DNA of 38,444 nt from Macrostomum lignano (GCA_002269645.1 NIVC01003897.1:1-38444); one strand, 5' to 3'. Shown: positions 456 through 37,717, counted from the stretch's first letter. Program-made: numbers and translations. The notes: a model not told the origin generated them from the sequence alone.

Positions 456-564
456 ATCCACCAGACAAAAAGTAGCTAGAGCGACAATTTCCTTAGCTTT
501 ATAGTGGCTCCTTTAAATTGGCATGGCGCTTTATACCTTTACATTTGAAATTGTATATCTTGAA

Positions 565-2345: not shown

Positions 2346-2394
2346 GCGCTTCTTTGATGTTTAGCAGTTTTGTTGTGTTTTTAAGGTGTTTTAA

Positions 2395-2480: not shown

Positions 2481-2699
2481 CAATTGGAGAACATGAATTG
2501 TGGCCCTTATAATTCAATTCTTACAGCAAGTCAATTGGAGTAAAAAGTTATGACATAATCAATTTCTCAGTCAGCCAGTATCAGTCTCAATTTAAGTTAG
2601 CAATATGGTTACGCAATTTAAATCAAGTCGTGTGTGCATTTCTTCGGTACTGTTTTCAACTTGTTGTGATGCAATCTTTATCACAATCGGAATTCAGTC

Positions 2700-3449: not shown

Positions 3450-4622
3450 GTTGTTGGGCCAGCCTCCCGGATCCTCAGTTGCTGGGCCAGCCTCCCAGAT
3501 CCTCAGTTGCTGGGCCAGCCTCCCAGATCCTCAGTTGCTGGGACAGCCCCCCAGATCCTCAGTTGCTGGGACAGCCCCCCCCCCCCAGATCCTCAGTTGC
3601 TGGGCCAGCCTCCCAGATCCTCAGTTGCTGGGCCAGCCTCCCAGATCCTCAGTTGCTGGGCCAGCCTCCCAGATCATTCAGTTGCTGGGACAGCGCCCCC
3701 CCCCCAGATCCTCAGTTGCTGGGCCAGCCTCCCAGATCCTCAGTTGCTGGACCAGCCTCCAAGCTCCTCAGTTGCTGGGCCAGCCTCCCAGATCCTCAGT
3801 TGCTGGGCAGCCAGCCTCCCAGATCCTCAGTTGCTGGATCAGCCTCCCAGATCCTCAGTTGCTGGGCCAGCCTCCCAGATCCTCAGTTGCTGGGCAGCCA
3901 GCCTCCCGGATCCTCAGTTGCTGGGCCAGCCTCCCAGATCCTCAGTTGCTGGATCAGCCTCCCAGATCCTCAGTTGCTGGATCAGCCTCCCAGATCCTCA
4001 GTTGCTGGGCCAGCCCCCCAGATCCTCAGTTGCTGGGCCAGCCTCCCAGATCCTCAGTTGCTGGGCCAGCCTCCCAGATCCTCAGTTGCTGGGACAGCCC
4101 CCCCAGATCCTCAGTTGCTGGGACAGCCCCCCCAGATCCTCAGTTGCTGGGCCAGCCTCCCAGATCCTCAGTTGCTGGGCCAGCCTCCCAGATCCTCAGT
4201 TGCTGGGCCAGCCTCCCAGATCATTCAGTTGCTGGGACAGCGCCCCCCCCCAGATCCTCAGTTGCTGGGCCAGCCTCCCAGATCCTCAGTTGCTGGGCCA
4301 GCCTCCCAGAGTGTCAGTTGCTGGGCCAGCCTCCTAGAGTGTCAGTTGCTGGGCCAGCCTCCCAGATCCTCAGTTGCTGGGCCAGCCTCCCAGATCCTCA
4401 GTTGCTGGATCAGCCTCCCGGATCCTCAGTTGCTGGGCCAGCCTCCCAGATCCTCAGTTGCTGGGCCAGCCTCCCAGAGTGTCAGTTGCTGGGCCAGCCT
4501 CCCAGAGTGTCAGTTGCTGGGCCAGCCTCCCAGATCCTCAGTTGCTGGGCCAGCCTCCCAGATCCTCAGTTGCTGGATCAGCCTCCCGGATCCTCAGTTG
4601 CTGGGCCAGCCTCCCAGATCCC
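3450..4622. repeat. Minisatellite, 28 bp unit CCTCAGTTGCTGGGCCAGCCTCCCAGAT
   Basis: ~41 copies with GGACAGCCCCC and AGAGTGTCAG variants. Confidence 0.95.
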
Positions 4623-5084
4623 AGTCTGTCTATAAAACACTAAGAGCTTCGCCGCTTTGAAACAGCAATACTCCATCGACTTAACTCATAAGAAGTCTTC
4701 TCAATGAAATGAGTTAAACAAAAGCGTACATAACTGCTTATTTCATTGCAAACGGGTAGATGGGAATTATTCAATTAGCAGAGAAAACAGCTGCTATAGG
4801 TGTAATTAAAAGTACAAGTAATGTAGAAAACAATTATATAAGTACAAAAGACGAAGTGGGGGCAGGTGATAATTAAGAATGAGCACATGCTTGAGTAGGG
4901 CTGAGCAGTGCAGCATACACAAAAAAGACTTGAAGAAAACCGGTTTAAACTGGTTTCAGGTACAGCACGTGGATTACAATAGTAGATGGGCACTGACTTT
5001 TGGGATAAAAAATGCCAACATTCATAACTGTTATTATTTAAATTTACTCTTTTCGTAATATTCAATCTAAAGTTTATCCAACAT

Positions 5085-6272
5085 TTAAATCCCTAAACTA
5101 CCTTACCTTAACTTGAATACCTAAACTACCTTACCTAAACTCGAATCCCTAAACTACCTGAACTCGAATCCCAAAACTATCTGAACTCGAATCCCTAAAC
5201 TCGAATCCCAAAACTACCTGAACACGAATCCCAAAACTACCTAAACTCGAATCCCTAAACTCGAATCCCAAAACTACCTGAACTCGAATCCCAAAACTAC
5301 CTAAACTCGAATCCCAAAACTACCTGAACTCGAATCCCAAAACTACCTGAACTCGAATCCCTAAACTACCTGAACTCGAATCCCTAAACTACCTGAACTC
5401 GAATCCCAAAACTACTTGAACTCGAATCCCAAAACTACCTGAACTCGAATCCCTAAACTACCTAAACTCGAATCCCAAAACTACCTGAACTCGAATCCCA
5501 AAACTACCTGAACTCGAATCCCTAAACTCGAATCCCAAAACTACCTGAACTCGAATCCCTAAACTCGAATCCCAAAACTACCTGAACTCGAATCCCTAAA
5601 CTCGAATCCCAAAACTACCTGAACTCGAATCCCAAAACTACCTAAACTCGAATCCCTAAACTCGAATCCCAAAACTACCTGAACTCGAATCCCAAAACTA
5701 CCTGAACTCGAATCCCAAAACTACCTAAACTCGAATCCCAAAACTACCTAAACTCGAATCCCAAAACTACCTGAACTCGAATCCCTAAACTACCTGAACT
5801 CGAATCCCTAAACTACCTGAACTCGAATCCCTAAACTACCTGAACTCGAATCCCTAAACTACCTGAACTCTAATCCCTAAACTACCTGAACTCGAATCCC
5901 TAAACTACCTGAACTCGAATCCCTAAACTACCTGAACTCTAATCCCTAAACTACCTGAACTCGAATCCCTAAACTACCTGAACTCGAATCCCAAAACTAC
6001 CTGAACTCGAATCCCTAAACTACCTGAACTCGAATCCCAAAACTACTTGAACTCGAATCCCAAAACTACCTGAACTCGAATCCCTAAACTACCTGAACTC
6101 GAATCCCTAAACTACCTGAACTCTAATCCCTAAACTACCTGAACTCGAATCCCTAAACTACCTGAACTCTAATCCCTAAACTACCTGAACTCGAATCCCA
6201 AAACTACCTAAACTCGAATCCCAAAACTACCTGAACTCGAATCCCAAAACTACCTGAACTCGAATCCCGAAA
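5085..6272. repeat. Minisatellite, 23 bp unit AACTCGAATCCCWAAACTACCTG
   Basis: ~50 copies, with interspersed 14-bp truncated units. Confidence 0.95.
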
Positions 6273-6282
6273 CCGCTAGCAT

Positions 6283-6288
6283 TTTATT
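6283..6288 (-). terminator. Putative SMC2 polyadenylation signal AATAAA
   Basis: AATAAA on the minus strand ~300 nt after the stop codon, immediately before the 23-mer array; not verifiable without transcripts. Confidence 0.4.
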
Positions 6289-6590
6289 GGCAGAAACTAG
6301 AAGCAGATTATGCAGCTCATAGTAAGGAAATAGCAGATCCCGAGCTACAGTTTTAGGATTAAGAATTGAAAATCCCAAAAAGGTCTAATTAGATTGGATA
6401 ATACAAGTTGGAAATGCCTTATGCCTAGGCGTAGAAAAATAAAATGCAATGCAATAGAGATGCAACAACAGTACAGGGACAAATGAGATAAATATGCAAG
6501 CCTATAAAAGCATAAAATTGAATAACTAAATGTATAATTATAAAAAATATTCGCGCAAACTTGAGTGATTTTGACAGCTTTAAAACCGCT

Positions 6591-7010
6591 TCACTTGTCC
6601 CTGGTGTGCCTGGTGACCGTGGACACCCCATCCACCAGCTTAGTCTTGAACAGCACGTTGGCATTGTTGAACATGCCGTCCTTGAGCGAGACTACAATAA
6701 ACTGAGACTGGCCGAAGTTCTCCTTAATCAGCTGGCCAATGTTCTGGGTGTGGCTCAGGTCAAGGGCGGCGTCGACTTCGTCAAGGATGTAAATTGGCGC
6801 CGGCTTGAACAGCAGCAGGGCCAGGATGAGCGACAGGGCCACCAGGGAGCGCTGGCCGCCGCTCAGCTCGCTTAGCGACTCCTTCCACTGCTGGCCGAAC
6901 CCGATGCGAAACTCGATGCCCTCCAGCACCGACCGGCCCGCGGAGGGCACCAGCTTGGCGTTGGCGCCTGGCAGCATGGTGGAGAACAGCTTGCCGAAGT
7001 CTGCGTTCAC
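6591..7010 (-). CDS. SMC2: SMC2 exon 12 (C-terminal ATPase half; stop)
   Basis: [15 protein letters not shown]...[36 protein letters not shown]...TRDK, then TGA. Confidence 0.96.
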
Positions 7011-9322
7011 CTGCGGCAGTGCATGAATTGGCTGGCGTTCAACAGCTGGAGAGCTGGGATGGAGTTGGGGATGAATGGGGAGCTGGGATGGATATGAGGA
7101 TAAAATGAGGAGCTGGGGCGGGGATGGGGATAAAATGGGAAGCTGGGACGGGAATGAGGATAAAATGAGGAGCTGGGGCGGGGATGGGGATAAATTGGGA
7201 AGCTGATACGGGAATGAGGATAAAATGGGAAGCTGGGACGGGGATGGGGATAAAATAGGAAGCTGGGCGGGGATGGGGATAAGATGGAGAGCTGGGGCGG
7301 GGATGAGGATAAAATGGGGAGCTGGACGGCGATGGGGATAATGCGGGGCTAAGATGGATATGAGGATAAAATGGGGAGCTGGGGCGGGGATGGGGATAAA
7401 ATGGAGAGCTGGAGCGGGGATGAGGATAAAATGGGAAGCTGGGACGGGAATGAGAATAAAATGGGAAGCTGGGACGGGGATGGGATAAAATGGGAAGCTG
7501 GGACGGGAATGAGGATAAAATGGGAAGCTGGGGCGGGAATGAGGATAAAATGGGAAGCTGGGGCGGGGATGGGGATAAAATGGGAAGCTGGGACGGGGAT
7601 GGGGATAAAATGGGAAGCTGGGACGGGGATGGGGATAAAATGGGAAGCTGGGACGGGAATGGGGATAAAATGGGAAGCTGGGACGGGAATGGGGATAAAA
7701 TGGGAAGCTGGGACGGGAATGGGGATAAAATGGGAAGCTGGGACGGGAATGAGGATAAAATGGGAAGCTGGGACGGGGATGGGGATAAAATGGGGAGCTA
7801 GGATGAATATGAGGATACACTGAGGATATGGGGTGGAGATGGGGATAAAATGGGGAGTTCGGATGGGTATGTAATAAAATAGAAAGCGACTCAAACCTTT
7901 TTGTAAGCAGTCATCAGAGCTTCATTTTTCTTCTTGTCCAGCTCGTCAATAATGCCCTGTATCTTGGCCTTGTCAGTCAGCACAATGTCCCGCTTGCCAA
8001 CCAGATCAGCGTATTGCTGCTCGGCAGTGGTCAGCATGTTCATGGCTCGCATGTTCACAGACTTGCCCAATCGCTCCTTGCGTTCCTCCAGCTTGGTTAG
8101 CCGGGCTCGCTGCTCCTTGGGATTGTTGCCCTGCGATGGGTGCGGTTGGGGAAATAGCGGGGCTTTAGTAGCAGAATCTGCCATCTGACCCTGAAGTAGC
8201 CGAATCTGCCATCTGACCCTGAAGTAGCCGAATCTGCCATCTGACCTGAAGTAGCCGAATCTGCCATCTGATCCTGAAGTAGCAAAATCTGCCATCTGAT
8301 CCTGAAGTAGCCGAATCTGCCATCTGATCCTGAAGTAGTTTAACTTGTCACCTGAGGCTACCATCTGAACCGGCAATCCGGCACTTACCCTGGTAACTAT
8401 CTGAATCTGCCAATTATGAAGAATCAGGGATTAAAGATTGGGAAGATTCATGGTTAAGAAGATTGGGAAGAATTCGGGATTAAAGATTGGGAAGAATCTG
8501 GGATTAAAGATCGGGAAGAATCTGGGATTTGAAGATCGGGAAGAATCTGGGATTTGAAGATTGGGAAGAATCTGGGATTTAAAGATTGGGAAGATTCATG
8601 GTTAAGAAGATTGGGAAGAATTCGGGATTAAAGATTGGGAAGAATCTGGGATTAAAGATCGGGAAGAATCTGGGATTTGAAGATCGGGAAGAATCTGGGA
8701 TTTGAAGATCGGGAAGAATCTGGGATTTGAAGATCGGGAAGAATCTGGGATTTGAAGATAGGAAAGAATCTGGGATTAAAGATTGGGAAGAATTCGGGAT
8801 TTAAAGATTGGGAAGAATCTGGGATATGGAGATATGCGGAGACTAGGATTTGAAGGCCCGTGAATCCATGCACTTGTCGATCGGTCTCACCTGGAAGTCG
8901 AAATGACCGCCGGGCTGATTAAAGTGCCGCTTCTCCGACTCGATCCACGGGTGAGAGGCGAGCAGCTCGTTGACTTTGTGCTGCGCATCCGCTGCCTCCT
9001 TGGCCTGGTCGGCCAGCTGGTGCTGCAGGTTGGCCAGCCGCAGCTCTCGCTGGCTGACCTCCGACTGCAGCGCCTTCGCCTGCTCCTCCAGATCCCGGAT
9101 AGCCTGATTGCGGGCCTTGATCTCGGCCCGTTTCTCTTCCAGCTGCCGCTTTGCCTCATCCAGGGCCTGCTTGAGCGCCTCCGCCTCGGCCTGGGGATCC
9201 AGGGGTTGTTATAGAGTTAATTAGAGAGATTAGAGAGCTTCCGGAGTACTCAAAGCGCTTAAGCTTCGATAGATCAGACGAGTATGGCAGGACAATACAC
9301 TGCACAAAATAAATAGATAGCG

Positions 9323-9354
<32 letters not shown>

Positions 9355-9451
9355 GGCAGACAGACAGACAGACACAGGCAGGCAGGCAGGCAGGCAGACA
9401 GACAGACAGACAGACAGACGGAAAGACAGACAGACAGACAGACAGACGGAA

Positions 9452-9508
<57 letters not shown>

Positions 9509-12500
9509 CACTAGCAAGCGACTCACCCGCTTCTCCTGAACCTCTCCAGAGCGGGCCTCGACGGACTCCTTGGCGGCGGCGATTTGCTCTTCGAGGCTGG
9601 CGGCCTCCTTGCGCAACTCCTCGATCTCCAGCTGCAGGGTGTCGTGCTGCGGCTGCCAGTTTTCCACATCGGCTCGTCGCGCCTCCCGTTCGTGTTGGGC
9701 CTTGGCTATGCGAGCCTGGAGGGGGGCGATTGGGGTTCAAATTGAACCACTTTGAATTCAAGTCCCGATGCAAATAATGGGAGTAGAGCCCACGTAGAGC
9801 TTGATTGTTAGATTAACAATCCATTGTATTCCTTCATCATTGATGTAGGCTAGATTAGCAACCCATTCTATTCCTTCATCATTGATGTAGGCTAGATAGC
9901 AATCCATTCTATTCTTTCATCATTGATTTAGGATAGATTAGCAATCCATTCCATTCTTTCATCATTGATTTAGGATAGATTAGCAATCCATTCTATTCTT
10001 TCATCATTGATGTAGGCTAGATTAGCAATCCATTCTATTCTTTCATCATTGATGTAGGCTAGATTAGCAATCCATTCTATTCCCTCATTTATTGATGTAG
10101 GCTAGATTAGCAATCCATTCTATTCCTTCATCATTAATGTAGGCTAGATTAGCAATCCATTCTATTCTATCACTGATGTGGGCTAGATTAGCAGCCCATT
10201 CTCTTTCTTCATCATCATCTTTGAGATTCCTTTTTTCATCTCCTATTGGCTAGACTAGCATTCTCACCTGCGCCGCCTTCATCTCTCGCTCCTGCACAGC
10301 GGCGGCATCCTTGACCTGCTCGGCCAGACTGGCCTCCCGTTCGCGCAGCCGCTTCAAGGCGGCGTTGGCCTCGGCTGCTGCAGTCTGCTCGCTGTCCAGC
10401 TCAGCCTGCAGCTCCTCCAGGTGCTTGGCCAGCTGCTGGTGATCCGTGTTGCCAATTCGCTGCTCCAGCAGAGCCAGCTCGTGCCGCTTCTGGTCCAAGT
10501 CCTGCCGCAGCTGCTGGTAGCGGCCGGCCGAGGCCTCCGCCTGCCTGACCGATTCGGCCACTTCGGCCAGCTGTCGCCGCGTCGCCTCGGCGCGCTCCCG
10601 CAGCTGGCGCAGCTTGGCGGCTTTCAGCAGCGTCGGCTCGCGGCTGCCGCGAAAACCGCCGGAGAGAGTGCCCTCGGGGCTGTACACCTCGCCCTCCAGG
10701 GTCACCGCCCGGCGGCGGATGTCCCGATGGAAGGCCACCTGCGGGTGAGGATGGCCATGATCCCTTCAGGCTTTAGATCATTTAGATGGCGCAGTATGAG
10801 GATCTGGGAGGGTCAAAGAGATGCCCTGTATGAGAGTCTCATAGAGATGACCCTAATGACGATCTGGGAGGTCATAGAGATGACCCTAATGACGATCTGG
10901 TAGGTCATAGAGATGACCCTAATGACGATCTGGGAGGTCATAGAGATGACCCTAATGACGATCTGGGAGGTCATAGAGATGACCCTAATGACGATCTGGG
11001 AGGTCATAGAGATGACCCTAATGACGATCTGGGAGGTCATAGAGATGACCCTAATGACGATCTGGGAGGTCATAGAGATGACCCTAATGACGATCTGGGA
11101 GGTCATAGAGATGACCCTAATGACGATCTGGGAGGTCATAGAGATGACCCTAATGACGATCTGGGAGGTCATAGAGATGACCCTAATGACGATCTGGGAG
11201 GTCATATGACCCTAATGACGATCTGGGAGGTCATAGAGATGACCTTAATGACGATCTGGGAGGTCATAGAGATGACCTTAACGACCTTCTGGGAGGTCAT
11301 AGAGATGACCTTAACGACTTTCTGGGAGGTCATAGAGATGACCTTAAAGACTTTCTGGGAGGTCGTAAAGATGACCTTAATGACGATCTGGGAGGTCATA
11401 GAGGTGACCTAAATGGCGATCTAAGAGGATCAGAGATAACCTCAACAGTATGAGAAAAGACCATAGACATAAACCCAGGAAACGCACCTTCCTGCCGGCC
11501 TCATCATCCTGCACCACAAAGCTGGCGCCGAACACAAACTGAGCGGCGGCCTCAACGGATTTGTCCCGCCTAACCAGATCCAGGGCCGGATAAGCTCGGC
11601 CTTGTCCGGCCACCTGGACAGCCAAATCGGCCTGGTGTTTAGGCAGGCACCTGGCCGAGATCTTATTCAACGGTATAAACGTTGTCTTCTGCCTGAGCTG
11701 GCCCCGCTGCAGCAGCAGCTTGGCCGTGGCCTCGGTGTCGACCACAACGTTGAACAGCTTGGCGCCGGCGGTGACCTCAAGGGCCACGGCGAATTTCTCG
11801 TCAACAGCTTCGAGCAGCTGGCATACGGGTCCGAGCACGCGGCGGCGATCGAACCGCGGCTCTGGGTCCGTGTAGTCGAATCCCAGCCGGGGATTAGCGG
11901 ATTGGAATTCCTCCAGATGGCGGCCCGTCTCATGCAGCTCGCGTTGCAGGGCCGACTGGCGCTCGAGCAGTCGCTGCTCGGCGGCCTCGTCGAAGCCGGT
12001 CTCGGCCAGCTGCTTCTGCGGGGGGGGGAGGGCGAGTCACCGCGGTGACGGCTAGCCGCCTGCCTGACTGTCACTCTTCTATCGAATATCTGCCACTCTT
12101 CTATGCACTGCCTGTCACTCTTCTATACACTGCCTGTCACTCTTCTATCGAATATCCGTCACTCTTATATTAACTGCCTGTCAGTCTACTATGTACTGCC
12201 TGTCACTCTTCTATTAACTGCCTGTCACTCTTCTATTAACTGCCTGTCAGTCTACTATGTACTGCCTGTCACTCTTCTATTAACTGCCTGTCAGTCTACT
12301 ATGTACTGCCTGTCACTCTTCTATGCACTGCCTGTCACTTTTCTATTAACTGCCTGTCAGTCTACTATGTACTGCCTGTCACTCTTCTATGCACTGCCTG
12401 TCACTCTTCTATTAACTGCCTGTCAGTCTACTATGTACTGCCTGTCACTCTTCTATGCACTGCCTGTCAATCTATAAATTTTGTCACTTTTCTACTGAAT

Positions 12501-27500: not shown

Positions 27501-30500
27501 CTGAAGGTCAGAAACGTTAAAGGCAAAACGCAATTTAATTTTTAATAACATTATAAGTTATAATACACAAGGACAACTTAACGTAACTTCAGTTGTCCTT
27601 GATAATACATCGCTCGTAATAAGTACCTGGCTTTACTCCACTCTACAGTCTGCTTTACTAGTCTTTTTATTTTCAATTATTTGAAATTTTTTTCAATTTT
27701 TTCAATTATTTTTCAATTCATTAATATTAAATTATTGTGCAGTGCAGTGCAGTGCCAGTGGACTTTAGTGGTGTAGCCAGGGAGGCCGCCTTAACAATCG
27801 TTGGGGCGGCAACTTCACCCCACCTGCAAGACACCCCACCAGGGGGGGGTGGGGTTGGGCGTGGCGGGTGCATGAGGCATGGCCAGCCAGGTCAACCCGC
27901 CCCCCCCAATTAAAATTCCTGGCTACGTCGATCACTGAGTGGATTTGTGGAGACTACAGATGAATTTCTTTCTTTGGTTGTTTGTTTCTAAGAACTAAAC
28001 AAAATATTTTTATTAACTTAAAAACGAAAAGCAAAAATATTTTACCGAAAATAACAAAGTAAAAACATGTTTCAAGTATTTCTTTATTAATTACAGCGTA
28101 ATACCGTATGATATTATTCACTTAGTTTTGAATTTAAGAATGAAAAATGCTAAAAATGTGACAACTGGCGTAATAGCTAAGCATATCAGTTTTAAATTTA
28201 AATATTGCGATTGTTGCAAAGTAACTGTAACGGACTTCCGAAATTTGAGTAACTTACCGTTACTCCGTTACCAAAATAGGAAAGTAACTTGCGTAAGGAA
28301 CGCTTTACGAAAAAGTAACTTGCGTTACCATTTACAAGTTACTCGGTAACGGAAGTGCCCAACACTGCAAATTAGGCACATTGTTAGGGCATTAGGAAAA
28401 AGATTATTATAAGTACAAGCACAGTGGCTTCTATGATCTGCATTTCCAAGTTTACTTGTCAATGGCACAGCACGTTGCACACACGTTGACATTCTTGCCT
28501 CTGTTCTAACAGATTTTGTAGTGCCAAAAGAGGCATGATGGACACTTGATCTGTAGGATGCAGAAAAGTTAATGCTGCATAATGAACAAGTTTCTTGTAT
28601 TCTCCTATATTTTGTTGAACCGCAAAGTGCTGAAAAGTCATGATTGGTTGCCATATATACAAATGTACACTCACTGACTCACTGACTGAGGTACGATCTA
28701 TGCAAGATAAAGGCAGGAATCTTTAAAAATTAAATACTAAAGACAGTTTAAGAGAAGTCCAGGTTTAAAAATAGAAGCGATCAATAAAATCGATAAAATA
28801 ATTGCCTTAAGCATTCTACAATACACTTGTACATTAACAAGGCTCCATGTGATGGTTAATAAATGGAGAAGTAGGCAAATGTCTAAACAAATATTGAATA
28901 AAAATCAGTGAAGTTTCCAAATGTGAGTTTGAGCAAAGCAATGTTTAGTGCCAAATATCTCAGCATCAAAGCTGTCTTTTGCAACACCTAGGGTGTCATT
29001 TTAAAGCTGAGACATGCGTATAGACATGACTAGAATTTGATAAGATTCTGATGAAAAACAAGGACATGGCAGCTGCATAAATATCGATAAAAAATCTGTG
29101 AAATTTCTAAATGTCAGTTTGCACAAACCAATGTTTAATGTTGAACATCTCAGCATCAAAGCTGTCTTTTGCAATGCCTAAGGTGTCATTTTAAAGCTAA
29201 GACATGCATAAAAAGTAAATTGAAGCATTTTTAATCCAGTATCTGCTTTTAGGCTGCTATGATTGAAACAATTTCAGTCAATGGTAAAGCAATGTCTAAT
29301 CAGAGTGATGCTAAGCAATTTTTAAATCAATGTATCTCGGAAAGATTTTTACTTCAATAAATAAATTAAAGCTTATTTGACGCGCAACACTTGCATAAAT
29401 ATATTCCAAAAACATGGTTGAAGTGGGTCAATTTTGAGAATTGTTTTGAATGTCTGTCTAAATATCTGTCGTAAAACCCTCACATCCCAGTAACAACCTA
29501 CACAGTTGAAAGATCATTTAGTGTGCTTTGTCTTTTGAAGACGCATACTAGGTCAAAAATAGATGAGAGCCAGCTAAATAGACTTGCAATGCTGTCAGTG
29601 CACAAAGACATTCAACTACCATACAAGCATGTGGTTGAAGAATATTCATAGCATTTCAACATGTGCCTGCAGCTGTTATAATTGTGAGCCATTTACTTTT
29701 ACTATATCAGACTGCTATGAGTCTTCTATTGTAATTCCTTTAAGTGTAGTCACTCATTGTTATTTTATTTTGCATATATTGCACAAAAAATAGAATGGTT
29801 CTGACTATGGAAAGCATAGTGCATGCTAGTGCAGGACAAAAAGATTTTCATTTACTTAAGCATTTAGTAAAAATTTTTTTTTTCTAATTTTTTATTAAAT
29901 TGTGAATTTGAATAGGTATTTTCATAGAATTTGAAACTTGACTGGCCGTTCAATGCTACCAAGCAACTACATATTTGATTTATGGCGCTTAATTTTCCTG
30001 TGACCTGCCTAGGCCCTATTGGGCCAGCAAATATAAGTAGCAGCAGCTACTCATATCCCTGCATCCCCCTGTGAGAAATTCAAATTCCTGGCTACACCCC
30101 TGGCCACATTCACATTTTTGTGCTTGAATTCTGTTCCTATATGTAATATATATAATCCTTTAGAAGTAATTCACAGATTTATTCATTAGACCAAATCTTC
30201 ACTAGGCCTAACTAACATTGTATAATTTGTATTGAGGGTTAGATAGAATAAAAAGCTAAAATGTGCAGAAAAAAAAAACACTTTTGTGGACTCAGGATCA
30301 ATATATAGTATGCTATATTATGGTACTATGCAATTTTATTCCTACCTGACTTAGATTTGTGATTCCCAGAAGAAAGCATATCGAATCAAGTATGTTAGAC
30401 TTTCCACTGCCATTCAAGCCAGTAATGGCGTTAAATTGTGGATCAAACACACCAACTTCAGTGCGCGTTGCATAGGATTTGAAACCCTCAATAACGATTT

Positions 30501-30513
30501 TCTTAATATGCAT
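6591..30513 (-). CDS. SMC2: Structural maintenance of chromosomes protein 2 (condensin subunit), complete 12-exon CDS, ~1176 aa
   Basis: Join (minus): 30513-30346, 19496-19185, 16157-16047, 15615-15415, 14695-14275, 13788-13613, 12015-11488, 10738-10268, 9715-9527, 9190-8891, 8130-7897, 7010-6591 = 3531 nt, open frame, GT-AG introns. Walker [10 protein letters not shown], hinge domain, signature LSGGQRS, Walker B/D-loop [11 protein letters not shown], and SMC2-typical C-terminus [29 protein letters not shown]. Confidence 0.97.
7045..7865. repeat. SMC2 intron 11 minisatellite, 30 bp unit GGGAAGCTGGGACGGGRATGRGGATAAAAT
   Basis: ~27 copies; homogeneous centre, degenerate edges. Confidence 0.95.
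7897..8130 (-). CDS. SMC2: SMC2 exon 11
   Basis: [11 protein letters not shown]...[11 protein letters not shown]...[15 protein letters not shown]; catcgCAG acceptor, weak donor AAG|GTTTGA. Confidence 0.92.
8172..8340. repeat. SMC2 intron 10 array A, 28 bp unit GAAGTAGCCGAATCTGCCATCTGAYCCT
   Basis: ~6 copies. Confidence 0.93.
8420..8826. repeat. SMC2 intron 10 array B, 24-25 bp unit GAAGATYGGGAAGAATCTGGGATTT
   Basis: ~16 copies. Confidence 0.93.
8891..9190 (-). CDS. SMC2: SMC2 exon 10
   Basis: [12 protein letters not shown]...[21 protein letters not shown]; tcccCAG acceptor, CAG|GTGAGA donor. Confidence 0.92.
9322..9508. repeat. SMC2 intron 9 (GACA)n microsatellite with GGCA interruptions
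   Basis: Directly visible, starting ~18 nt from the donor. Confidence 0.96.
9527..9715 (-). CDS. SMC2: SMC2 exon 9
   Basis: [11 protein letters not shown]...[19 protein letters not shown]...EVQEKR; ccctcCAG acceptor, CGG|GTGAGT donor. Confidence 0.9.
9815..10200. repeat. SMC2 intron 8 minisatellite, 42 bp unit TAGATTAGCAATCCATTCTATTCTTTCATCATTGATGTAGGC
   Basis: ~9 copies. Confidence 0.93.
10268..10738 (-). CDS. SMC2: SMC2 exon 8 (hinge end, coiled coil)
   Basis: [28 protein letters not shown]...; cacccgCAG acceptor, CAG|GTGAGA donor. Confidence 0.94.
10797..11425. repeat. SMC2 intron 7 minisatellite, 33 bp unit GAGGTCATAGAGATGACCCTAATGACGATCTGG
   Basis: ~19 copies, near-perfect core. Confidence 0.96.
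11488..12015 (-). CDS. SMC2: SMC2 exon 7 (hinge)
   Basis: [10 protein letters not shown]...[23 protein letters not shown]...[16 protein letters not shown]...TFIPLNKI...FVFGASFVV; cccccgCAG acceptor, AAG|GTGCGT donor. Confidence 0.94.
12060..12756. repeat. SMC2 intron 6 minisatellite, ~22 bp unit ACTGCCTGTCACTCTTCTAT(GC/TA)
   Basis: ~31 copies with alternating variants. Confidence 0.93.
12885..13060 (+). mobile_element. tRNA-derived SINE with a CORE(MIR)-like domain
   Basis: tRNA-like fragment AGAGCGTCGGACTCACGA, then TGTGTCCTTTAGCAAGACACTCA...CTTCAGTT...CTGTAAAATGGG (12937-13001), closely resembling the CORE consensus from memory; ends fuzzy. Confidence 0.6.
13613..13788 (-). CDS. SMC2: SMC2 exon 6
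   Basis: [29 protein letters not shown]...VAHLE; ttcctttCAG acceptor (phase 1), GAG|GTAAGC donor. Confidence 0.92.
13846..14230. repeat. SMC2 intron 5 minisatellite, 22 bp unit CAGTGCACCCCTCTACCCTTGT
   Basis: ~17 copies. Confidence 0.94.
14275..14695 (-). CDS. SMC2: SMC2 exon 5 (coiled coil)
   Basis: [13 protein letters not shown]...[18 protein letters not shown]; donor A|GTGAGT, phase 1; exact 5' boundary uncertain among tandem in-frame AGs. Confidence 0.85.
14735..15308. repeat. SMC2 intron 4 minisatellite, 20-23 bp unit ACCTTCAGATTGTCCCCCCACC
   Basis: ~26 copies, variable C-run. Confidence 0.94.
15415..15615 (-). CDS. SMC2: SMC2 exon 4
   Basis: [24 protein letters not shown]...TALLQ; cctcctCAG acceptor, CAG|GTGAGG donor. 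Confidence 0.92.
16047..16157 (-). CDS. SMC2: SMC2 exon 3
   Basis: [37 protein letters not shown]; ttcctgCAG acceptor, TCT|GTAAGT donor; too short for the ORF track. Confidence 0.93.
16398..19060. repeat. SMC2 intron 2 satellite, 20-21 bp units GATCTTGATCTA+variable tail, with a 609-bp higher-order repeat
   Basis: ~130 units; GTTATACATC marker at 17281, 17890 and 18499. Confidence 0.95.
19185..19496 (-). CDS. SMC2: SMC2 exon 2 (Q-loop)
   Basis: [21 protein letters not shown]...[19 protein letters not shown]; acceptor ttcctctcAAG, donor GAG|GTAAAT. Confidence 0.95.
20352..20512 (+). repeat. 5' LTR
   Basis: TGTTATG...CAACA; carries an 8-bp tandem duplication (ATAGACTC) absent from the 3' LTR. 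Confidence 0.95.
20513..20526 (+). other. Primer-binding site, probably tRNA-Leu
   Basis: TGGTGTCAGAGGTG directly after the 5' LTR; resembles the complement of tRNA-Leu 3' ends (...TCTGACACCA). Confidence 0.7.
20594..21433 (+). CDS. gag: Retrotransposon Gag
   Basis: [13 protein letters not shown] capsid-like N-terminus, IRDQIVLG motif, two Zn knuckles [13 protein letters not shown] and [14 protein letters not shown]. Confidence 0.9.
   Translation: MDGRLKPPKPFCFDEHKAENWSKWISAFELYMTATKRDESLAKVQIATLLTAIGEEGREIYSTFEKSEGDEELSKVTKLFKEYCKPSVNKTFERYKFRQRRQNEHESIDSFVSGLKQLIKTCSFEKPAYELTVNESIIRDQIVLGIRDTELREWLLREQELTLDKAISICRASESSKTQVRIMMGNTSGEISKYIQREVNSIVKPRSTGRPDLKYKERRPNKRFGSNGKPMVGKSEGCSFCGKKHKKGSCPAYGKTCKSCRKQNHFSNVCRNKTVRALD
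21434..24681 (+). pseudogene. pol: Retrotransposon Pol (PR-RT-RNase H-IN) with one frameshift
   Basis: Protease CDTG; [11 protein letters not shown] and FIDD; RNase [21 protein letters not shown]; IN HTGH...CIAC, GTDIF, SDNGPPF, LAERG. In frame with gag across one TGA; -1 shift at ~23651-23660. Confidence 0.92.
24757..24768 (+). other. Polypurine tract
   Basis: GAAGAAGGGAGA abutting the 3' LTR. Confidence 0.85.
24769..24921 (+). repeat. 3' LTR
   Basis: Differs from the 5' LTR by 3 substitutions plus the 8-bp indel (hand comparison). Confidence 0.95.
27196..28367. mobile_element. Non-autonomous hAT-type element (MITE)
   Basis: 12-bp TIR CAGTGTTGGGCA; perfect 8-bp TSD CAAATTAG (27188-27195 and 28368-28375); many subterminal GTAAC/GTTAC motifs. 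Confidence 0.9.
27766..27937. mobile_element. Small GC-rich hAT-like MITE nested in the previous element
   Basis: Imperfect TIRs TAGTGGTGTAGCCAGG...CCTGGCTACGTCGATCACTG; near-match 8-bp flanks AGTGGACT / AGTGGATT. Confidence 0.55.
30087..30102. repeat. Probable right TIR of the hAT relic
   Basis: CCTGGCTACACCCCTG (rc CAGGGGTGTAGCCAGG), a typical hAT-like terminus downstream of the transposase relic; partner left TIR not found. Confidence 0.45.
30346..30513 (-). CDS. SMC2: SMC2 exon 1 (ATG; Walker A)
   Basis: [15 protein letters not shown]...[25 protein letters not shown]; donor CAG|GTAGGA, phase 0. Confidence 0.95.
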
Positions 30514-31933: not shown

Positions 31934-33127
31934 CGTCAAGAGGGGCGTCCGGAAAGTAGTGTTACTTTTGCTTGGTGTGGACGTATGGACAGTCACACTT
32001 GCATGTGCTTGGTGTCATTTGAAAGCGGCAAGTCTCTTCTTTAAAATGACACCAATTGCAAGAGATTTGAATCTGTGCTTCAAGAGATATGGACGATTAA
32101 GTAGAGAAAGGTCAGTCATAGACTTACAGAACCTCAAAAGTGTCAACAGAAAACTTTCATCACGAGCGTAATTATTCCAGAAAAAAACAAAAAACACAAC
32201 AGTACAGTACAGAAGCCCTCAGATCCCCTGACGGTCCAAACCATTGACTCCTGCACCCATGTCTCGTTGCCAGTTACGATCAGCTCTCGAAAGGCTTCCC
32301 ATCCTCCATGTTGATTGACCAGCTCCAGGTTATTCACACATTTCTGCTTGCAATCCAGCTTCATGACCTCAGTGAGCAATCGTGGTACCCAACAGGCACT
32401 CAGCTTGACGTGATTCATCTTCGGCAGGCACTCGTGAACTGTCGACTTCGGGCAATCCAATCGATCGGCCATTTCACGAATGCTCTGGTGGCAGTCTTCA
32501 TCAATCAAGTCGAGAATGCGATCCGTCAGGCTGCTGCTGTCGCGAATTGCAGGGCGTCCGGACCTTGGCATGTTGCTCGCGTCAGTTCTTCCAGCCTGAA
32601 ACTCGCCCACCCACCTGCTTACTGTCATCTTGCTGACAGCATGATCGCCATGAGCTGTGCAAAGTTGCCTGTGGATGTCAGCCAATTTGGTTCTGGAGCT
32701 CCAAAGTGTAAAGATGGCATGTCACTGCCCAGTCTTTGAATGCACATCCATTTGCAGTTCACAATTGAAAATTGAATGTCAATAAACTTTTCAGGCCTAG
32801 CAGAATCAGTTTTACAAGTCTCGTAGTTTTCTGAGACAGCCCCTCTTGTTCACTGCATCACATTTGGCCATAGACAGCCCATGATTACGAAAAAATCGAT
32901 AAACCCGTAAAAGTTTCTGTTGACATTTTTGAGGTTCTGTAAGTCCATGACTGACCTTTCTCTACTTAATCGTCCATATCTCTTGAAGCACAGATTTAAA
33001 TCTCTTGCAATTGGTGTCATTTTAAAAAAGAGACTTGCCGCTTTCAAATGACACCAAGCACATGCAAGTGTGACTGTCCATACGTCCACACCAAGCAAAA
33101 GTAACACTACTTTCTGGACGCCCCTCG
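31934..33127 (-). mobile_element. Internally deleted mariner-like transposon with ~215-bp TIRs
   Basis: TA flanks; TIRs 31934-~32157 and ~32910-33127 (C-GAGGGGCGTCC..., left end has a 5-bp insertion); truncated transposase inside. Confidence 0.9.
32143..32720 (-). pseudogene. Mariner transposase fragment (HTH domains to first catalytic motif)
   Basis: VSRWVGEFQAG, PRSGRP, SIREMADRL, WVPRLL, IVTGNETWV (catalytic D to N); rest of the DD34D domain deleted; 5' end frameshifted. Confidence 0.9.
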
Positions 33128-34378
33128 TACAAATAAGAAGTCTTTGAAGTCTAAGAATATTCATCTTTGTAGTTTCTATAAAATAGATATTTTAGCATTA
33201 TCAATTTAACCGGTCAAATAATAAAAAGCCTATTTGTCTGGTATTAACCAGATGAATAGGAAAGCATGGCCATTATCCAGTAACGAGACAAATTAACACA
33301 TCACTATTTGTCTGGTCACCAGACAAATAACAACTGCCTAAAAATAAAGAAACATGTTATTGATAAATACAATAATATATTCTAATGGTTCTTGTCATAG
33401 TAGCTTACTTTAGGTAATTGTTAACTATTACATTGTAATTTAACTGAAATTTCTTCCACATGACTATAAAAATAGCCATTTTGCTTCTTATCTATGGGAC
33501 TATAAAAACAACAGTTTTGCTATTGTATTGATATGATTAGGCCTACATTTAGTAAAGACCAAAGGCCCAGGCAATATCTTATGTATTAACCATAAAAATA
33601 ACCATTTTGTTGTTTATATTGTTACTATAACAATAACAATTGCCTAAGATTTTGTTGTCAATTGTCATTATGCTAAATATTATCTTTATTTACAAATATT
33701 AGAAATATAGATTCCTAGAATTAATTTATTATTTTTGTTTATTCTTAATTTTTCTTATTTTTTATTTTATAGTTATTGCCAATAAAAGCATTTAAAGCTA
33801 AGCCTTAAAATGGCCTTTTTTAAACTTTATTGAAGTCCAACTTTGTATTTGTAATTTTTCATCAAAATAACTTATATTTATTAGGTCAAAAATAGAAAGT
33901 GTTTGTATATTTATGCATTATATTTATATATACTACTAGTATCAATCAGTATAGATTATTCAATGGATTATATTTTAAAATAAAATACTATATCTTATAA
34001 TAAGCCTTTTTAGGTATTGATATAGTTTTTATTAAATGTCAAAGTATTATTAGAATTTTTAAGAAAATATTATGGCATAAGATATATTTTCTAAACTAAT
34101 CTTCTATTCTTTCATGATAAAATATATAATCTATAGATCATATAAATTCCAAAATGTCAATTAATTAACAATAACAATTGTGGATATATAGATTTTAACC
34201 TCAAATACAAAGTCTAAGGTGCTAATTAAGTGCTTAAAACTATATAGACTTTTATAGTGACATTATGCCTTTAAATAAAAGACATTGTCATAGACTATAG
34301 TCCCATACACCATGTATACACTATTTATATCGATCTTTAATAAGTCATGAATGCACAAAATTTATGCTTTTATCAAGC

Positions 34379-34455
34379 ATGAAACTGGGTCTGTATTCTA
34401 GACTGCATCCTGAGGCCGAGTCTAGCATATTTGAAGTGTTTTATGAACTGCATAG
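34379..34455 (+). CDS. DENND1: DENND1-like exon 1
   Basis: ATG; MKLGLYSRLHPEAESSIFEVFYELH; donor AG|GTAAGT (phase 2); not in the ORF track. Confidence 0.78.
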
Positions 34456-36846
34456 GTAAGTATTTTATATCACAGAATAATGTATTGTATATTCTATGAT
34501 TTTACATAATGTTAGAGTTTTTTATAATCAAATACAAGGACTTAATTACAAATAATAAATATTATAATACTCAAACCCAAAATTTTAGGAGTATTTATAT
34601 TTAAATCTTGTATCTTGTGATGAATCCTAAGAATCCTTAAATCCCAAAATCCAAATCATTGGAATACATGGATTCAAATCCCAAATCATAAAATTCCATG
34701 GGCTCAAATCCCAAAGCATCAAAATCCATGAACTCAAATCTGAAATCACCAAATTACATGGACTCAAATCCGAAATCACCAAAATCCCTGGTCTCAAATC
34801 CCAAATCACCAAAATCCCTGGACTCAAATCCCAAATCACCAAAATCCCTGGTCTCAAATCCCAAATCACCAAAATCCCTGGACTCAAATCCCAAATCACC
34901 GAAATCCCTCTAGACTCAAATCTTCAAATCATTAAAATCCCTAGACTCGAATCCCAAATCACCAAAATCCCTAGCCTCGACTCAAATCCCAAGACTGAAA
35001 TTTCAATCAAATGAAAAGCCAGCATTATAGATAACACTCACACCTGTTTGATTCAGGTATGCAGACCTAGACGAGACCATCCCCGTGTTCAGCTACTGGA
35101 CCGTCGCCAACCGCGATAACTCCAACCTCGTGGCGGAATGGGAGAAAAAGATTGGGGAATACGCCATGCCTCCATCGCTGCGCTGCCGGGATCGCTGCGA
35201 CAGCGCCTGCGCCGCTTTCACCGATTTGGACTCGCGGCTGACCTTCCTGTTCGCCAGCTATTATCGAACTAACGGCGGCCTTCGCTGCCTGTTGTTCGTT
35301 TCTAAGAATCCTTGGTTCGAAGTGTTCGCCGAGCTGCTTAATAGCCTGGCACAGTTACTGCTGGGTGAGTATTAAAGTATATTGGTATGCATTTCTTTGA
35401 TCCAGGATTTCAGGGATTGTGATCTCGAATCATGGGAGTTCAGGGACTCTGATCCCGAGTCATGGGATTTCAGGGACTCTGATCCCGAATCATGGGATTT
35501 CAGGGACTGATCCCGAATCATGGGATTTATGGGGTTCTGATCCCGAATCATGGGATTTATGGGGTTCTGATCCCAAATCATGGGATTTATGGGGTTCTGA
35601 TCCCTAATCATGGGATTTATGGGGTTCTGATCCCAAATCATGGGATTTATGGGGTTCTGATCCCAAATCATGGGATTTATGGGGTTCTGATCCCAAATCA
35701 TGGGGTTCTGATCCCGAATCATGGGATTCATGGGGTTCTGATCCCAAATCATAAGATTTATGGGGTTCTGATCCCGAATCATGGGATTTATGGGGTTCTG
35801 ATCCCAAATCATGGGGTTCTGATCCCGAATCATGGGATTCATGGGGTTCTGATCCCAAATCATGGGATTTATGGGGTTCTGATCCCAAATCATGGGATTT
35901 ATAGGGTTCTGATCCCAAATCATGGGGTTTTTGGGGTTCTGATCCCAAATCATGGGATTTATGGGGTTCTGATCCCAAATCATGGGATTTATGGGGTTCT
36001 GATCCCAAATCATGGGATTTATGGGGTTCTGATCCCAAATCATGGGATTTATGGGGTTCTGATCCCAAATCATGGGATTTATGGGTTCTGATCCCAAATC
36101 ATGGGATTTTTGGGGTTCTGATCCCAAATCATGGGATTTTTGGGGTTCTGATCCCTAATCATGGGATTTATGGGGTTCTGATCCCAAATCATGGGATTTA
36201 TGGGGTTCTGATCCCAAATCATGGGGTTCTGATCCCGAATCATGGGATTCATGGGTTCTGATCCCAAATCATGGGATTCATGGGGTTCTGATCCCAAATC
36301 ATGGGATTTATGGGGTTCTGATCCCGAATCATGGGATTCATGGGGTTCTGATCCCAAATCATGGGATTTATGGGGTTCTGATCCCGAATCTGATACGCAG
36401 GCGACCGCCGCAACGAAACCCTGGCCAACGTGATCCTGTGCCAGCTGGAGAACTGTCCGCGGGTGACGCCCGGTTCAACCCTGTCCGGCGCCGCCTGCCT
36501 CACGCCCGACCAGGTCCGCCTCAGTCGGACAGTCGCTCCGGACGATCAGCTGCCTGCGCTGGCCGCTTGCGCGCCGCTACGCGAGCTGTACAGCCGGCTG
36601 TCCGAGTCCGACTCGCTTCTGTTTGTGCTGTGCGCTCTGCTGTGCGAGAAGAAACTGCTGCTGATTGGCAGGCGGCCGGGCCAGCTCAGCCTGGCCGTGT
36701 TCGGCTGCTTAGCGCTGCTCTATCCGTTCAGCTGGGAGCACGTGCTCGCCCCGCTACTGTCAGACAGCAATGTGGATCATCTCAGCTGTCTGGTGCCGTT
36801 CGTATTCGGCATGTCTGAGGCTCTTTTCGAGGCTAATAAGGCTCAG
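34379..36846 (+). CDS. DENND1: DENN domain-containing protein 1-like (connecdenn / Rab35 GEF family), 5' partial, exons 1-3
   Basis: Join 34379-34455, 35057-35364, 36401-36846; phases 2 and 1 match. N-terminus YSRLHPEAESSIFEVFYE, uDENN FTDLDSRLTF...PWFEVFAELLNSLA and cDENN EKKLLL...LLYPFSWEHVLAPLL...PFVFG resemble DENND1A/B. Gene continues beyond the window; paralogue not assignable. Confidence 0.85.
34630..34995. repeat. DENND1-like intron 1 minisatellite, 30 bp unit AAATCCCAAATCACCAAAATCCCTGGWCTC
   Basis: ~12 copies, degenerate edges. Confidence 0.9.
35057..35364 (+). CDS. DENND1: DENND1-like exon 2 (uDENN)
   Basis: ctgtttgattCAG acceptor; YADLDETIPVFSYW...PWFEVFAELLNSLAQLLL; G|GTGAGT donor (phase 1). 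Confidence 0.85.
35405..36390. repeat. DENND1-like intron 2 minisatellite, 30 bp unit GATCCCRAATCATGGGATTTATGGGGTTCT
   Basis: ~34 copies with 21-bp deletion variants; ends ~10 nt before the acceptor. Confidence 0.95.
36401..36846 (+). CDS. DENND1: DENND1-like exon 3 (cDENN)
   Basis: tgatacgCAG acceptor; GDRRNETLANVILCQL...LLYPFSWEHVLAPLL...EANKAQ; CAG|GTTAGT donor. Confidence 0.85.
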
Positions 36847-36884
36847 GTTAGTTTCAATGGTAGTTTCGGGGACACTAATTCAAG

Positions 36885-37612: not shown

Positions 37613-37717
37613 ATGCAACTAGGATGAAGATGAAAGTTTTAGGGATAGTTTCAGGGTGAGTTTCCGAGATTTTCAAGGAATTGCAGAAGCAGTCTTGAGG
37701 GCAGGTTCAAAGTTAGT

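What the first reader, a model, noticed from the sequence alone, without database searches (positions are those of the whole stretch)
3450..36390. Different monomers share a hidden core TCCCRRAT, always on the pre-mRNA strand when intronic
Seen: exact TCCCRRAT in 6 of 17 minisatellite monomers. These are the 28-mer at 3450 (TCCCAGAT), SMC2 introns 10B and 7 (TCCCAGAT), intron 2 (TCCCGAAT), and DENND1 introns 1 and 2 (TCCCAAAT/TCCCGAAT). Near matches occur in the 1-455 array (CCCCAGAT), the 5085 array (TCCCAAAA) and intron 11 (TCCCAGCT). All five intronic exact matches are on the sense strand although the genes point in opposite directions. Longer shared words: CCTCCCAGATC (28-mer vs intron 7), GATCCCGAATCA (SMC2 intron 2 vs DENND1 intron 2), ACTCGAATCCCAAA (5085 array vs DENND1 intron 1 edge). 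A rough hand estimate is ~0.3% chance per random 25-mer (post hoc, equal base frequencies). Inference: a sequence-specific driver of array birth (like a minisatellite core or recombination hotspot), or an RNA/DNA-binding factor; KH-domain poly(C)-binding proteins bind UCCC words.
Basis: partly seen in the sequence, partly recalled or inferred. Interest (0 to 1): 0.78.

Follow-up and report, generated by a model that had tools for sequence, protein, structure and literature searches.

The report
Shared word in flatworm minisatellite arrays
Six short tandem-repeat arrays in a 38-kb stretch of the flatworm Macrostomum lignano really do share the word TCCCRRAT far more often than chance allows. 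The evidence points to related repeat families, partly built from an old 7-base repeat, and not to a demonstrated binding site or repeat-making signal.

Summary
TCCCRRAT occurs 135 times against 7 expected, 132 of them in six arrays. A search-wide simulation (any 8-mer with two R/Y positions) reached six arrays in 0 of 2000 and 1 of 2000 trials.

The window is Macrostomum lignano. SMC2 lies on the - strand and a DENN-domain gene on the + strand. All five intronic core arrays read in sense.

- The core is not better conserved than the rest of the monomer within arrays.
- It is absent as a dispersed word outside arrays (1 seen, 2.1 expected).
- The strand rule rests on two genes (two-sided p 0.06 at best).

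The six arrays split into two sub-families. A is yTCrAA-TCCCrAAT-C (8418, 16399, 34669, 35405, plus 5092). B is CCTCCCAGATC[C/G]TCA (3450, 10839). In A the core reads as one period plus one base of a degenerate heptamer, CCCRAAT, which fits the rest of several monomers.

Other 12-23-nt blocks link 12 of the 18 arrays. The likeliest reading is a reticulate minisatellite family: a new member of a known kind. A cis-acting role is not excluded. The genome-wide test could not be run here.

The parts
3450..4625 (+). 28-nt minisatellite of about 41 copies, consensus GTTGCTGGGCCAGCCTCCCAGATCCTCA. Sub-family B. It lies downstream of SMC2 with no exon evident nearby.
   Evidence: TRF. 29 exact cores on +. 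Shares CCTCCCAGATCCTCA 15/15 with the decayed flank copy of array 10839. No GC-rich exon-like segment in 1-6600.
8418..8855 (-). 25-nt minisatellite of about 17 copies in SMC2 intron 10. Sense consensus CCAATCTTCAAATCCCAGATTCTTC. Sub-family A, carrying both the AG and GA forms of the core.
   Evidence: Shares TCAAATCCCA with 34669. Intron placement from the exon map.
10839..11422 (-). 33-nt minisatellite of about 18 copies in SMC2 intron 7. Sense consensus CCTCCCAGATCGTCATTAGGGTCATCTCTATGA. Sub-family B. A decayed copy sits in the 3' flank at 10797-10811.
16399..19056 (-). 21-nt minisatellite of about 126 copies that makes up about 88% of SMC2 intron 2. Sense consensus AGATCAAGATCCCGAATCCCT. 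Sub-family A. The core is present in only about 30% of copies. A 609-bp higher-order unit is repeated at about 100% identity over 17100-18600.
34669..34972 (+). 30-nt minisatellite of about 10 copies in intron 1 of the DENN gene, consensus TGGACTCAAATCCCAAATCACCAAAATCCC. Sub-family A. The whole monomer reads as four decayed heptamers.
   Evidence: Fit to the cyclic heptamer with the core held fixed: p=0.006. Its edge copy at 34936-34958 matches a 5092-array variant 22/23.
35405..36390 (+). 30-nt minisatellite of about 33 copies that makes up about 95% of DENN intron 2, consensus GGATTTATGGGGTTCTGATCCCAAATCATG. Sub-family A. It also holds an inverted partial copy (GGGATTT).
5092..6273 (+). 23-nt minisatellite of about 50 copies, near-core TCCCTAAA/TCCCAAAA. 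It starts immediately beyond the SMC2 AATAAA signal and is oriented opposite to SMC2. It links to 34669, 16399, 14141 and 36885.
   Evidence: Heptamer fit p=0.04.
7052..7854 (-). 30-nt minisatellite in the last SMC2 intron, near-core TCCCAGCT on the sense strand, with several (A)TCCC(C) words per monomer.
3..465 (+). 18-nt minisatellite at the window edge, near-core CCCCAGAT.
34623..34652 (+). Short run with an 8-nt period, (AATCCTAA) x 3.6, abutting the 5' edge of array 34669. A possible remnant of the primitive short repeat.
   Evidence: TRF; sequence.
6591..30513 (-). SMC2 gene (context). Twelve coding exons were mapped, and 9 of the 10 introns after intron 1 hold a tandem array.
34364..38444 (+). 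DENN-domain (DENND1-like) gene (context). It runs off the window end.

Best explanation
TCCCRRAT(C) is the best-preserved block of related minisatellite families in the tandem-repeat-rich genome of Macrostomum lignano. No independent functional core has been demonstrated.

Shown:
- The sharing is non-random.
- It is confined to an 8-15-nt block, rising to 23 nt in one pair.
- The six arrays split into sub-family A (8418, 16399, 34669, 35405, plus near-core 5092; consensus yTCrAA-TCCCrAAT-C) and sub-family B (3450, 10839; CCTCCCAGATC[C/G]TCA).
- In A the core equals one period plus one base of a degenerate heptamer, CCCRAAT, and the rest of several monomers is also made of decayed copies of that heptamer.

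Inferred:
- A short (CCCRAAT)n-type repeat, or arrays derived from it, mutated and was re-amplified at longer periods (21, 23, 25 and 30 nt) by slippage and unequal exchange.
- Pieces of existing arrays were copied to new sites and re-amplified together with unrelated local sequence. This produced mosaic monomers that keep only a shared block.
- The link between A and B, and the sense-only orientation, may be coincidence at this sample size.
For: - Non-random sharing.
- Pairwise monomer similarity: 13 pairs at p<=0.01 against 1.5 expected.
- Flanks anchored at the core are 36% identical against 26% expected, p=0.01.
- Long pair-specific extensions: 22/23 nt between a 5092 variant and an edge copy of 34669; 15/15 between 3450 and the decayed flank copy of 10839; 17/18 between 34669 and 35405; GATCCCGAATCA in 16399 and 35405.
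- Decayed edge or flank copies resemble other arrays more than the interior consensus does.
- Heptamer model: CCCRAATCCCRAATCCC with up to 3 mismatches gives 21 hits against 0.35 expected, in 5092, 16399 and 34669.
- With the core held fixed, whole circular monomers fit a cyclic CCCRAAT better than shuffles: 34669 p=0.006, 5092 p=0.04, 16399 p=0.064, 8418 p=0.072. Fisher-combined over all eight core or near-core arrays, this is about 0.002 (my arithmetic).
- Runs of 8- and 14-nt period sit at the edges of arrays 34669 and 5092, and an 8-nt-period stretch lies just inside the sense-5' end of array 16399.
- Block sharing is general and not special to this word: CCCTAAACTACC (5092/14141), CCAAAACTACCT (5092/36885), TCAGTGCACCCCT (13841/14141), a 19/21 match between 9809 and 14141, and CCCCCCTCTACCTT (13841/14731).
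- There is no within-array constraint on the core and no dispersed copies outside arrays.
Against: - With the core removed, the consensus remainders are not detectably similar. Simple descent of whole monomers by point mutation is therefore not enough. It needs mosaic remodelling, or a slower rate of change in the core between arrays, and the latter is what a driver model predicts.
- The heptamer fit fails for 3450, 10839 and 35405.
- Ungapped autocorrelation of the consensus monomers was not significant.
- All intronic copies are in sense, 5 of 5, or 6 of 6 with the near match. Pure neutral dispersal does not predict this.
- Only one 38-kb window was available.
Confidence: 0.55

Rival explanations
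1. The core is a cis-acting DNA element that promotes the initiation or expansion of arrays. It could be a recombination or nicking hot spot, or a slippage-prone site. Monomers that keep it would be preferentially amplified. This is the reader's 'driver of array birth', analogous to the Jeffreys minisatellite core.
For: The core is shared among arrays whose remainders are unrelated. It appears in the dominant monomer of each array even though individual copies decay freely, which is what amplification bias would give. The window is 37% tandem arrays and nearly every SMC2 intron holds one, so some efficient array-forming process exists.
Against: The six arrays reduce to two sub-families, joined only through the TCCCAGAT of 8418, and that link is not significant on its own. 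Twelve of 18 arrays lack the core yet are just as large. The largest array amplifies as a 609-bp unit in which 70% of monomers lack the core. The word is not enriched in non-array DNA. There is no common secondary structure.
Confidence: 0.2
2. The core works at the RNA level. Intronic arrays would present many UCCC-type sites on the pre-mRNA to a poly(C)-binding or KH-domain protein, or to another splicing factor, which would explain the sense orientation.
For: All 5 intronic exact-core arrays, plus the near-core array 7052, are in sense. The arrays fill 88-95% of SMC2 intron 2 and DENN intron 2 and end 10-50 nt from several of the 3' splice sites. There is a precedent for intronic minisatellites carrying splicing motifs: CeRep25B in C. 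elegans (PMC4039745).
Against: Only two genes are involved, giving p=0.06 at best. The three non-intronic core or near-core arrays (3, 3450, 5092) carry the same word with no evident transcript. The core is not preferentially conserved within arrays. Nine of 14 intronic arrays are G-rich on the sense strand (my count of G against C in the consensus monomers; not computed), so there is no general C-rich sense bias. No binding data exist.
Confidence: 0.08
3. The arrays are internal tandem repeats of one mobile-element family (MITE- or Helitron-like), and the core is part of that element.
For: Related arrays lie at several loci up to 31 kb apart and in both chromosomal orientations. Three other mobile elements are present in the window.
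Against: With arrays masked, self-BLAST finds no similarity between array flanks. It finds only the LTR pair, a mariner-like TIR pair and one foldback element, none of them next to core arrays. The core is absent from those elements.
Confidence: 0.07
4. Chance combined with post-hoc choice of a degenerate word.
For: The word was chosen after looking. The link between sub-families A and B through RR could be coincidence.
Against: The search-wide simulation gives p of about 0.0005 or less. Within sub-family A the shared blocks are 12-23 nt long.
Confidence: 0.04

Closest known systems
Human hypervariable minisatellite 'core' families (Jeffreys-type; from my own knowledge)
   Same: Tandem arrays at many loci, with monomers of different length and sequence that share a short core of about 10 nt. 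The core was found by comparing monomers.
   Different: The word is different: TCCCRRAT(C) against a G-rich, chi-like core. The animal is a flatworm. Most arrays here are intronic. No hypervariability or recombination data exist. Here the core is partly explained as a heptamer period.
Higher-order repeats derived from short simple repeats (the classical model of satellite evolution; from my own knowledge)
   Same: Monomers of 21-30 nt can be read as 3-4 decayed copies of a 7-nt unit. Short-period runs survive at array edges. A 609-bp higher-order unit sits on top of the 21-mer.
   Different: The heptamer fit is significant or marginal for only four of eight arrays. Sub-family B shows none.
CeRep25B and other dispersed intronic minisatellites of C. 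elegans (PMC4039745)
   Same: An invertebrate minisatellite family found mostly in introns (75%), clustered regionally, and carrying short motifs proposed to act in splicing.
   Different: CeRep25B is a single 24-nt palindromic monomer family. Here the monomers differ and only a block is shared. No link to alternative splicing was tested.
Satellite-DNA 'library' and superfamilies with conserved boxes (from my own knowledge)
   Same: Related repeat variants coexist in one genome, with a conserved box and differential amplification at each locus.
   Different: These are small interspersed intronic arrays (0.3-2.7 kb), not large heterochromatic satellites.

Membership tests
Minisatellite core family (Jeffreys-type) | Tandem arrays of 10-60-nt monomers at several loci | tested here: met
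   18 arrays with periods of 18-42 nt.
Minisatellite core family (Jeffreys-type) | A short core shared by otherwise dissimilar monomers, beyond chance | tested here: met
   Six arrays share the core. The search-wide simulation reached six in 0 of 2000 and 1 of 2000 trials. The remainders are dissimilar.
Minisatellite core family (Jeffreys-type) | Hypervariable copy number, or recombination hot-spot activity tied to the core | not testable with these tools
   A single assembly window; no population or meiotic data.
Higher-order repeat derived from a short simple repeat | The whole monomer aligns to a cyclic short unit better than chance | tested here: inconclusive
   With the core held fixed: 34669 p=0.006, 5092 p=0.04, 16399 p=0.064, 8418 p=0.072; 3450, 10839, 35405 and 7052 not significant. 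Ungapped autocorrelation was not significant.
Higher-order repeat derived from a short simple repeat | Short-period runs at or near array edges | tested here: met
   TRF periods of 8 nt at 34623-34652, 14 nt at 5092-5159, and 8 nt at 18839-18859.
Mobile-element-borne tandem repeat (MITE- or Helitron-like) | Conserved non-repeat termini or inverted repeats flanking the arrays | tested here: not met
   Self-BLAST with arrays masked shows no flank similarity between arrays.
Poly(C)-binding / KH-domain protein target | Clustered C-triplet words on the transcribed RNA | tested here: met
   UCCC words recur every 21-33 nt on the sense strand of five introns. This is a weak, non-specific criterion.
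Poly(C)-binding / KH-domain protein target | The site is preferentially conserved, or protein binding is shown | tested here: not met
   Mean conservation percentile of the core within arrays is 0.43. Binding is not testable here.
Interstitial telomere-like repeat | Runs of the telomeric unit, (TTAGGG)n, which I expect for flatworms from my own knowledge | tested here: not met
   Only single CCCTAA words per monomer in 5092, 14141 and 10839; no runs.

The most novel reading that the evidence does not exclude
TCCCRRATC, or its heptamer (CCCRAAT)n, is a cis-acting seed recognised by a flatworm factor or favoured by a transcription-coupled process. It nucleates minisatellites preferentially with the C-rich strand as the pre-mRNA strand. 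This would help explain why M. lignano introns fill with arrays, in a genome where simple and tandem repeats make up 15%.
Probability: 0.1. Interest if true: 0.7.

Novelty: new member of a known kind. Interest (0 to 1): 0.3.

Why it matters
M. lignano is a regeneration and transgenesis model whose genome is 15% simple and tandem repeats (PMC5730564). In this window 37% of the DNA is tandem arrays, and 9 of the 10 SMC2 introns after intron 1 hold one.

Knowing that these arrays form related, mosaic families helps repeat annotation, assembly validation and intron modelling. It also gives a concrete system for studying how minisatellites are born and spread.

If the core proved to be a strand-specific seed genome-wide, the long-standing question of what a minisatellite 'core' does would become testable in a tractable animal. 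On present evidence it is an ordinary family relationship.

Tried and rejected
- Fetching more M. lignano DNA failed. The closest protein, P0131, is not on record in the contig collection. The exon-level protein searches found no 100% hits, so the genome appears to be absent from the collections.
- The one metagenome scan, for two spaced GATCCCRAATC words, returned at least 120 loci. The four densest that I read were unrelated repeat runs from unknown organisms, three of them with a 7-nt period of the (GGGATTY)n kind. They only show that this heptamer exists elsewhere as a simple repeat.
- Internal periodicity by ungapped autocorrelation was not significant. I replaced it with a wrap-around alignment test.
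- Hairpin-driven slippage: z-scores ran from -1.7 to +2.2, with no common structure.
- A tRNA, SINE or other RNA-family origin: no tRNA and no Rfam hit in the window.
- A mobile-element origin: no conserved flanks.
- A telomere-derived origin: only single CCCTAA words.
- CpG decay as the cause of the RR positions (CG to CA): compatible with the TCCCGAAT/TCCCAAAT and TCCCGGAT/TCCCAGAT variants seen within arrays, but not tested further.
- Literature searches found no description of M. lignano minisatellite families. The 2015 genome paper is not held.


Full report
**What the window is**

A spliced translation of the - strand exons matches a UniRef Macrostomum lignano SMC protein at 96%, and about 98-100% within most exons. 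All other animals are at or below 50%. The window is therefore M. lignano, a free-living flatworm.

- SMC2 runs on the - strand from exon 1 (30346-30513) to the last exon (6591-7010). An AATAAA signal lies near 6288.
- Intron 1, about 10.8 kb, holds a Ty3/gypsy-type LTR element, an element with large inverted repeats, and other AT-rich DNA.
- A mariner-like remnant sits between SMC2 and the next gene.
- A divergently transcribed DENN-domain gene lies on the + strand. Exon 1 ends at a GTAAGT donor at 34456/34457. Exons 2 and 3 give a DENN Pfam hit at 7.5e-20.
- Tandem arrays cover 37% of the window. Nine of the ten SMC2 introns after intron 1 contain one, and some arrays fill 88-95% of the intron.
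- Simple and tandem repeats are reported as 15% of this genome (PMC5730564).

**Checking the observation**

TCCCRRAT occurs 135 times against 7 expected. All but three hits are in six arrays: 3450 (+), 8418 (-), 10839 (-), 16399 (-), 34669 (+) and 35405 (+). The near matches and all three longer shared words are present as stated. With the gene map above, the five intronic exact-core arrays and the near-core array 7052 read on the pre-mRNA strand.

To correct for the post-hoc choice of word, I scored every 8-mer with any two R/Y positions on the 18 circular consensus monomers, both strands. The observed maximum is six arrays. Per-monomer shuffles reached six in 0 of 2000 sets, and Markov-1 monomers in 1 of 2000. 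The sharing is real.

The strand rule is not established. Five of five gives two-sided p = 0.06 even if the arrays are independent, and only two genes contribute. The three non-intronic core or near-core arrays (3, 3450, 5092) are all on +, opposite to the nearest gene.

**Anatomy of the similarity**

- Pairwise local alignment of circular monomers gives 13 pairs at p<=0.01 where 1.5 are expected.
- Anchored at the core, the six flanking bases on each side are 36% identical against 26% expected (p=0.01). The base after the core is C in five of six arrays.
- Once the 8-mer is cut out, the remainders are no more alike than shuffles (1 of 36 pairs at p<=0.05).
- The similarity is therefore a block, not the whole monomer. 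The block is 8-9 nt across all six arrays and 12-23 nt in particular pairs:
  - CCTCCCAGATCCTCA, 15/15, between 3450 and a decayed flank copy of 10839
  - GATCCCGAATCA in 16399 and 35405
  - 17/18 between 34669 and 35405
  - 22/23 between a 5092 variant and an edge copy of 34669
- The arrays fall into sub-family A (8418, 16399, 34669, 35405, plus 5092; yTCrAA-TCCCrAAT-C) and sub-family B (3450, 10839).
- A and B are joined only because 8418 carries TCCCAGAT. My rough estimate for two unrelated families sharing one 8-mer is a few per cent to about 20%, depending on how many comparisons are allowed. That link is not significant on its own.

**The heptamer reading**

TCCCRAAT is what a tandem heptamer (CCCRAAT)n reads like across a unit boundary.

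- Two and a half units, allowing up to 3 mismatches, match 21 times against 0.35 expected, in 5092, 16399 and 34669.
- I aligned whole circular monomers to a cyclic CCCRAAT, held the core fixed, and shuffled only the remainder. The results were 34669 p=0.006, 5092 p=0.04, 16399 p=0.064 and 8418 p=0.072. Arrays 3450, 10839, 35405 and 7052 were not significant.
- Fisher-combined over all eight, this is about 0.002 (my arithmetic).
- TRF also finds 8- and 14-nt periods at the edges of arrays 34669 and 5092, and an 8-nt-period stretch just inside the sense-5' end of 16399 (sequence).
- This fits the classical route from a short simple repeat to longer higher-order monomers. A further 609-bp higher-order unit, at about 100% identity, sits on top of the 21-mer in 16399.
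- The simpler ungapped autocorrelation test was negative, so this part is supported but not proven.

**Tests of a functional core**

- Within arrays, the core window ranks at a mean percentile of 0.43 for conservation among all 8-nt windows. In arrays 3450, 8418 and 16399 it is among the more variable parts.
- In array 16399 only 32 of 110 anchored copies read TCCCGAAT. Many read TCTCCAAT, TCTCTAAC or TTCCGAAT instead.
- Outside arrays, with generous margins, the word occurs once in 22.5 kb against 2.1 expected.
- Trimers of the six monomers show no common or unusually stable DNA fold.
- Array flanks share no mobile-element-like sequence.
- There is no tRNA or Rfam family in the window.

None of this excludes an amplification bias that favours core-bearing monomers. 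It gives that idea no positive support either.

**The core is not the only shared block**

These other blocks link arrays:
- CCCTAAACTACC (5092/14141)
- CCAAAACTACCT (5092/36885)
- TCAGTGCACCCCT (13841/14141)
- a 19/21 match between 9809 and 14141, in opposite orientation within the same gene
- CCCCCCTCTACCTT (13841/14731)

Together with the core links they connect 12 of the 18 arrays. The AAACTACC block lies on the antisense strand in both genes, although in array 5092 it is on the same strand as the core-like word. Monomers in this region therefore look like mosaics of shared blocks plus unrelated sequence.

I infer, but have not shown, that pieces of existing arrays are copied to new sites, for instance by template switching during repair. 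They would then be re-amplified by slippage or unequal exchange together with local sequence.

**Comparison with known systems**

- Descriptively this is a minisatellite-core situation like the human Jeffreys families. The word, the organism and the intronic setting differ, and the defining functional property, hypervariability or hot-spot activity, cannot be tested here.
- Dispersed intronic minisatellite families are known in invertebrates, for example CeRep25B in C. elegans, which is 75% intronic and carries proposed splicing motifs (PMC4039745).
- I found no paper describing M. lignano minisatellite families.
- I file this as a new member of a known kind.

**What could not be done**

No further M. 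lignano DNA could be fetched. The metagenome scan returned only unrelated repeat runs, mostly of a 7-nt period.

**Verdict**

The best explanation is related, partly heptamer-derived, mosaic minisatellite families (confidence 0.55). Interest is 0.3.

Noticed in passing
6591-19529 (SMC2 introns 2-11): Nine of the ten SMC2 introns after intron 1 contain a tandem array. Some arrays fill most of the intron (88% of intron 2), and several end only 36-50 nt from the 3' splice site (10 nt in DENN intron 2). The window is 37% arrays against 15% reported for the genome.
   Followed up: partly
17100-18600: The 21-nt array in SMC2 intron 2 carries a 609-bp (29-monomer) higher-order unit repeated at about 100% identity. 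This is either a very recent amplification or possibly an assembly duplication.
   Followed up: partly
13841-14229; 5092-6273; 36885-37604; 9809-10215; 14731-15310: Arrays without the core also share 12-21-nt blocks: CCCTAAACTACC, CCAAAACTACCT, TCAGTGCACCCCT, CACTGATGTGGGnTAGnTTAG and CCCCCCTCTACCTT. Array 14141 looks like a chimera of a block from its neighbour 13841 and a block from 5092. The 9809/14141 match is inverted within one gene.
   Followed up: partly
20372-24921 (+ strand, inside SMC2 intron 1): A Ty3/gypsy-type LTR retroelement, antisense to SMC2. Its LTRs of about 141 bp are 97.9% identical. Pol is split into two overlapping ORFs: RT, RNase H and the integrase zinc domain in 21479-23761, and the integrase core in 23635-24681. 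This implies a frameshift in the integrase region. The upstream 287-aa ORF has no Pfam hit.
   Followed up: partly
31940-33126: A mariner-like remnant with 218-bp terminal inverted repeats at 97% identity. Its internal ORF keeps only the HTH domains; no catalytic domain was found. It lies between the divergent SMC2 and DENN genes.
   Followed up: partly
26256-29483: Large inverted repeats (26256-27090 against 28786-29483, 86-95% identical) enclose a central segment that includes a GC-rich stretch at 27751-27960. This looks like a foldback or TIR element in SMC2 intron 1.
   Followed up: no
UniRef protein P0131 against window 7897-35345: The public M. lignano 'SMC' protein model is chimeric. 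Its first 88 residues come from the antisense strand of DENN exon 2 and residues 82-220 from the mariner HTH ORF. It lacks SMC2 exon 1 and the last exon, and it retains part of an intron next to array 12064.
   Followed up: yes
9323-9508: A (GACA)47 microsatellite fills much of SMC2 intron 9.
   Followed up: no
about 16195-16210 (- strand): A yeast-like branch-point word, TTTACTAAC, sits near the 3' end of SMC2 intron 2, downstream of the array. The array itself therefore need not supply the branch site.
   Followed up: no
36885-37604: The 24-nt array in DENN intron 3 has two blocks of distinct variants, ...GCAGATGGAAG followed by ...GCAGCTAAAGA. This shows stepwise replacement of one monomer variant by another.
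   Followed up: no
L021, L036, L083 (metagenome contigs): Unknown organisms in JGI metagenomes carry long runs of the heptamers GGGATTC, GGGATCT and GGGATTT, the complement of the CCCRAAT-type unit inferred here.
   Followed up: no
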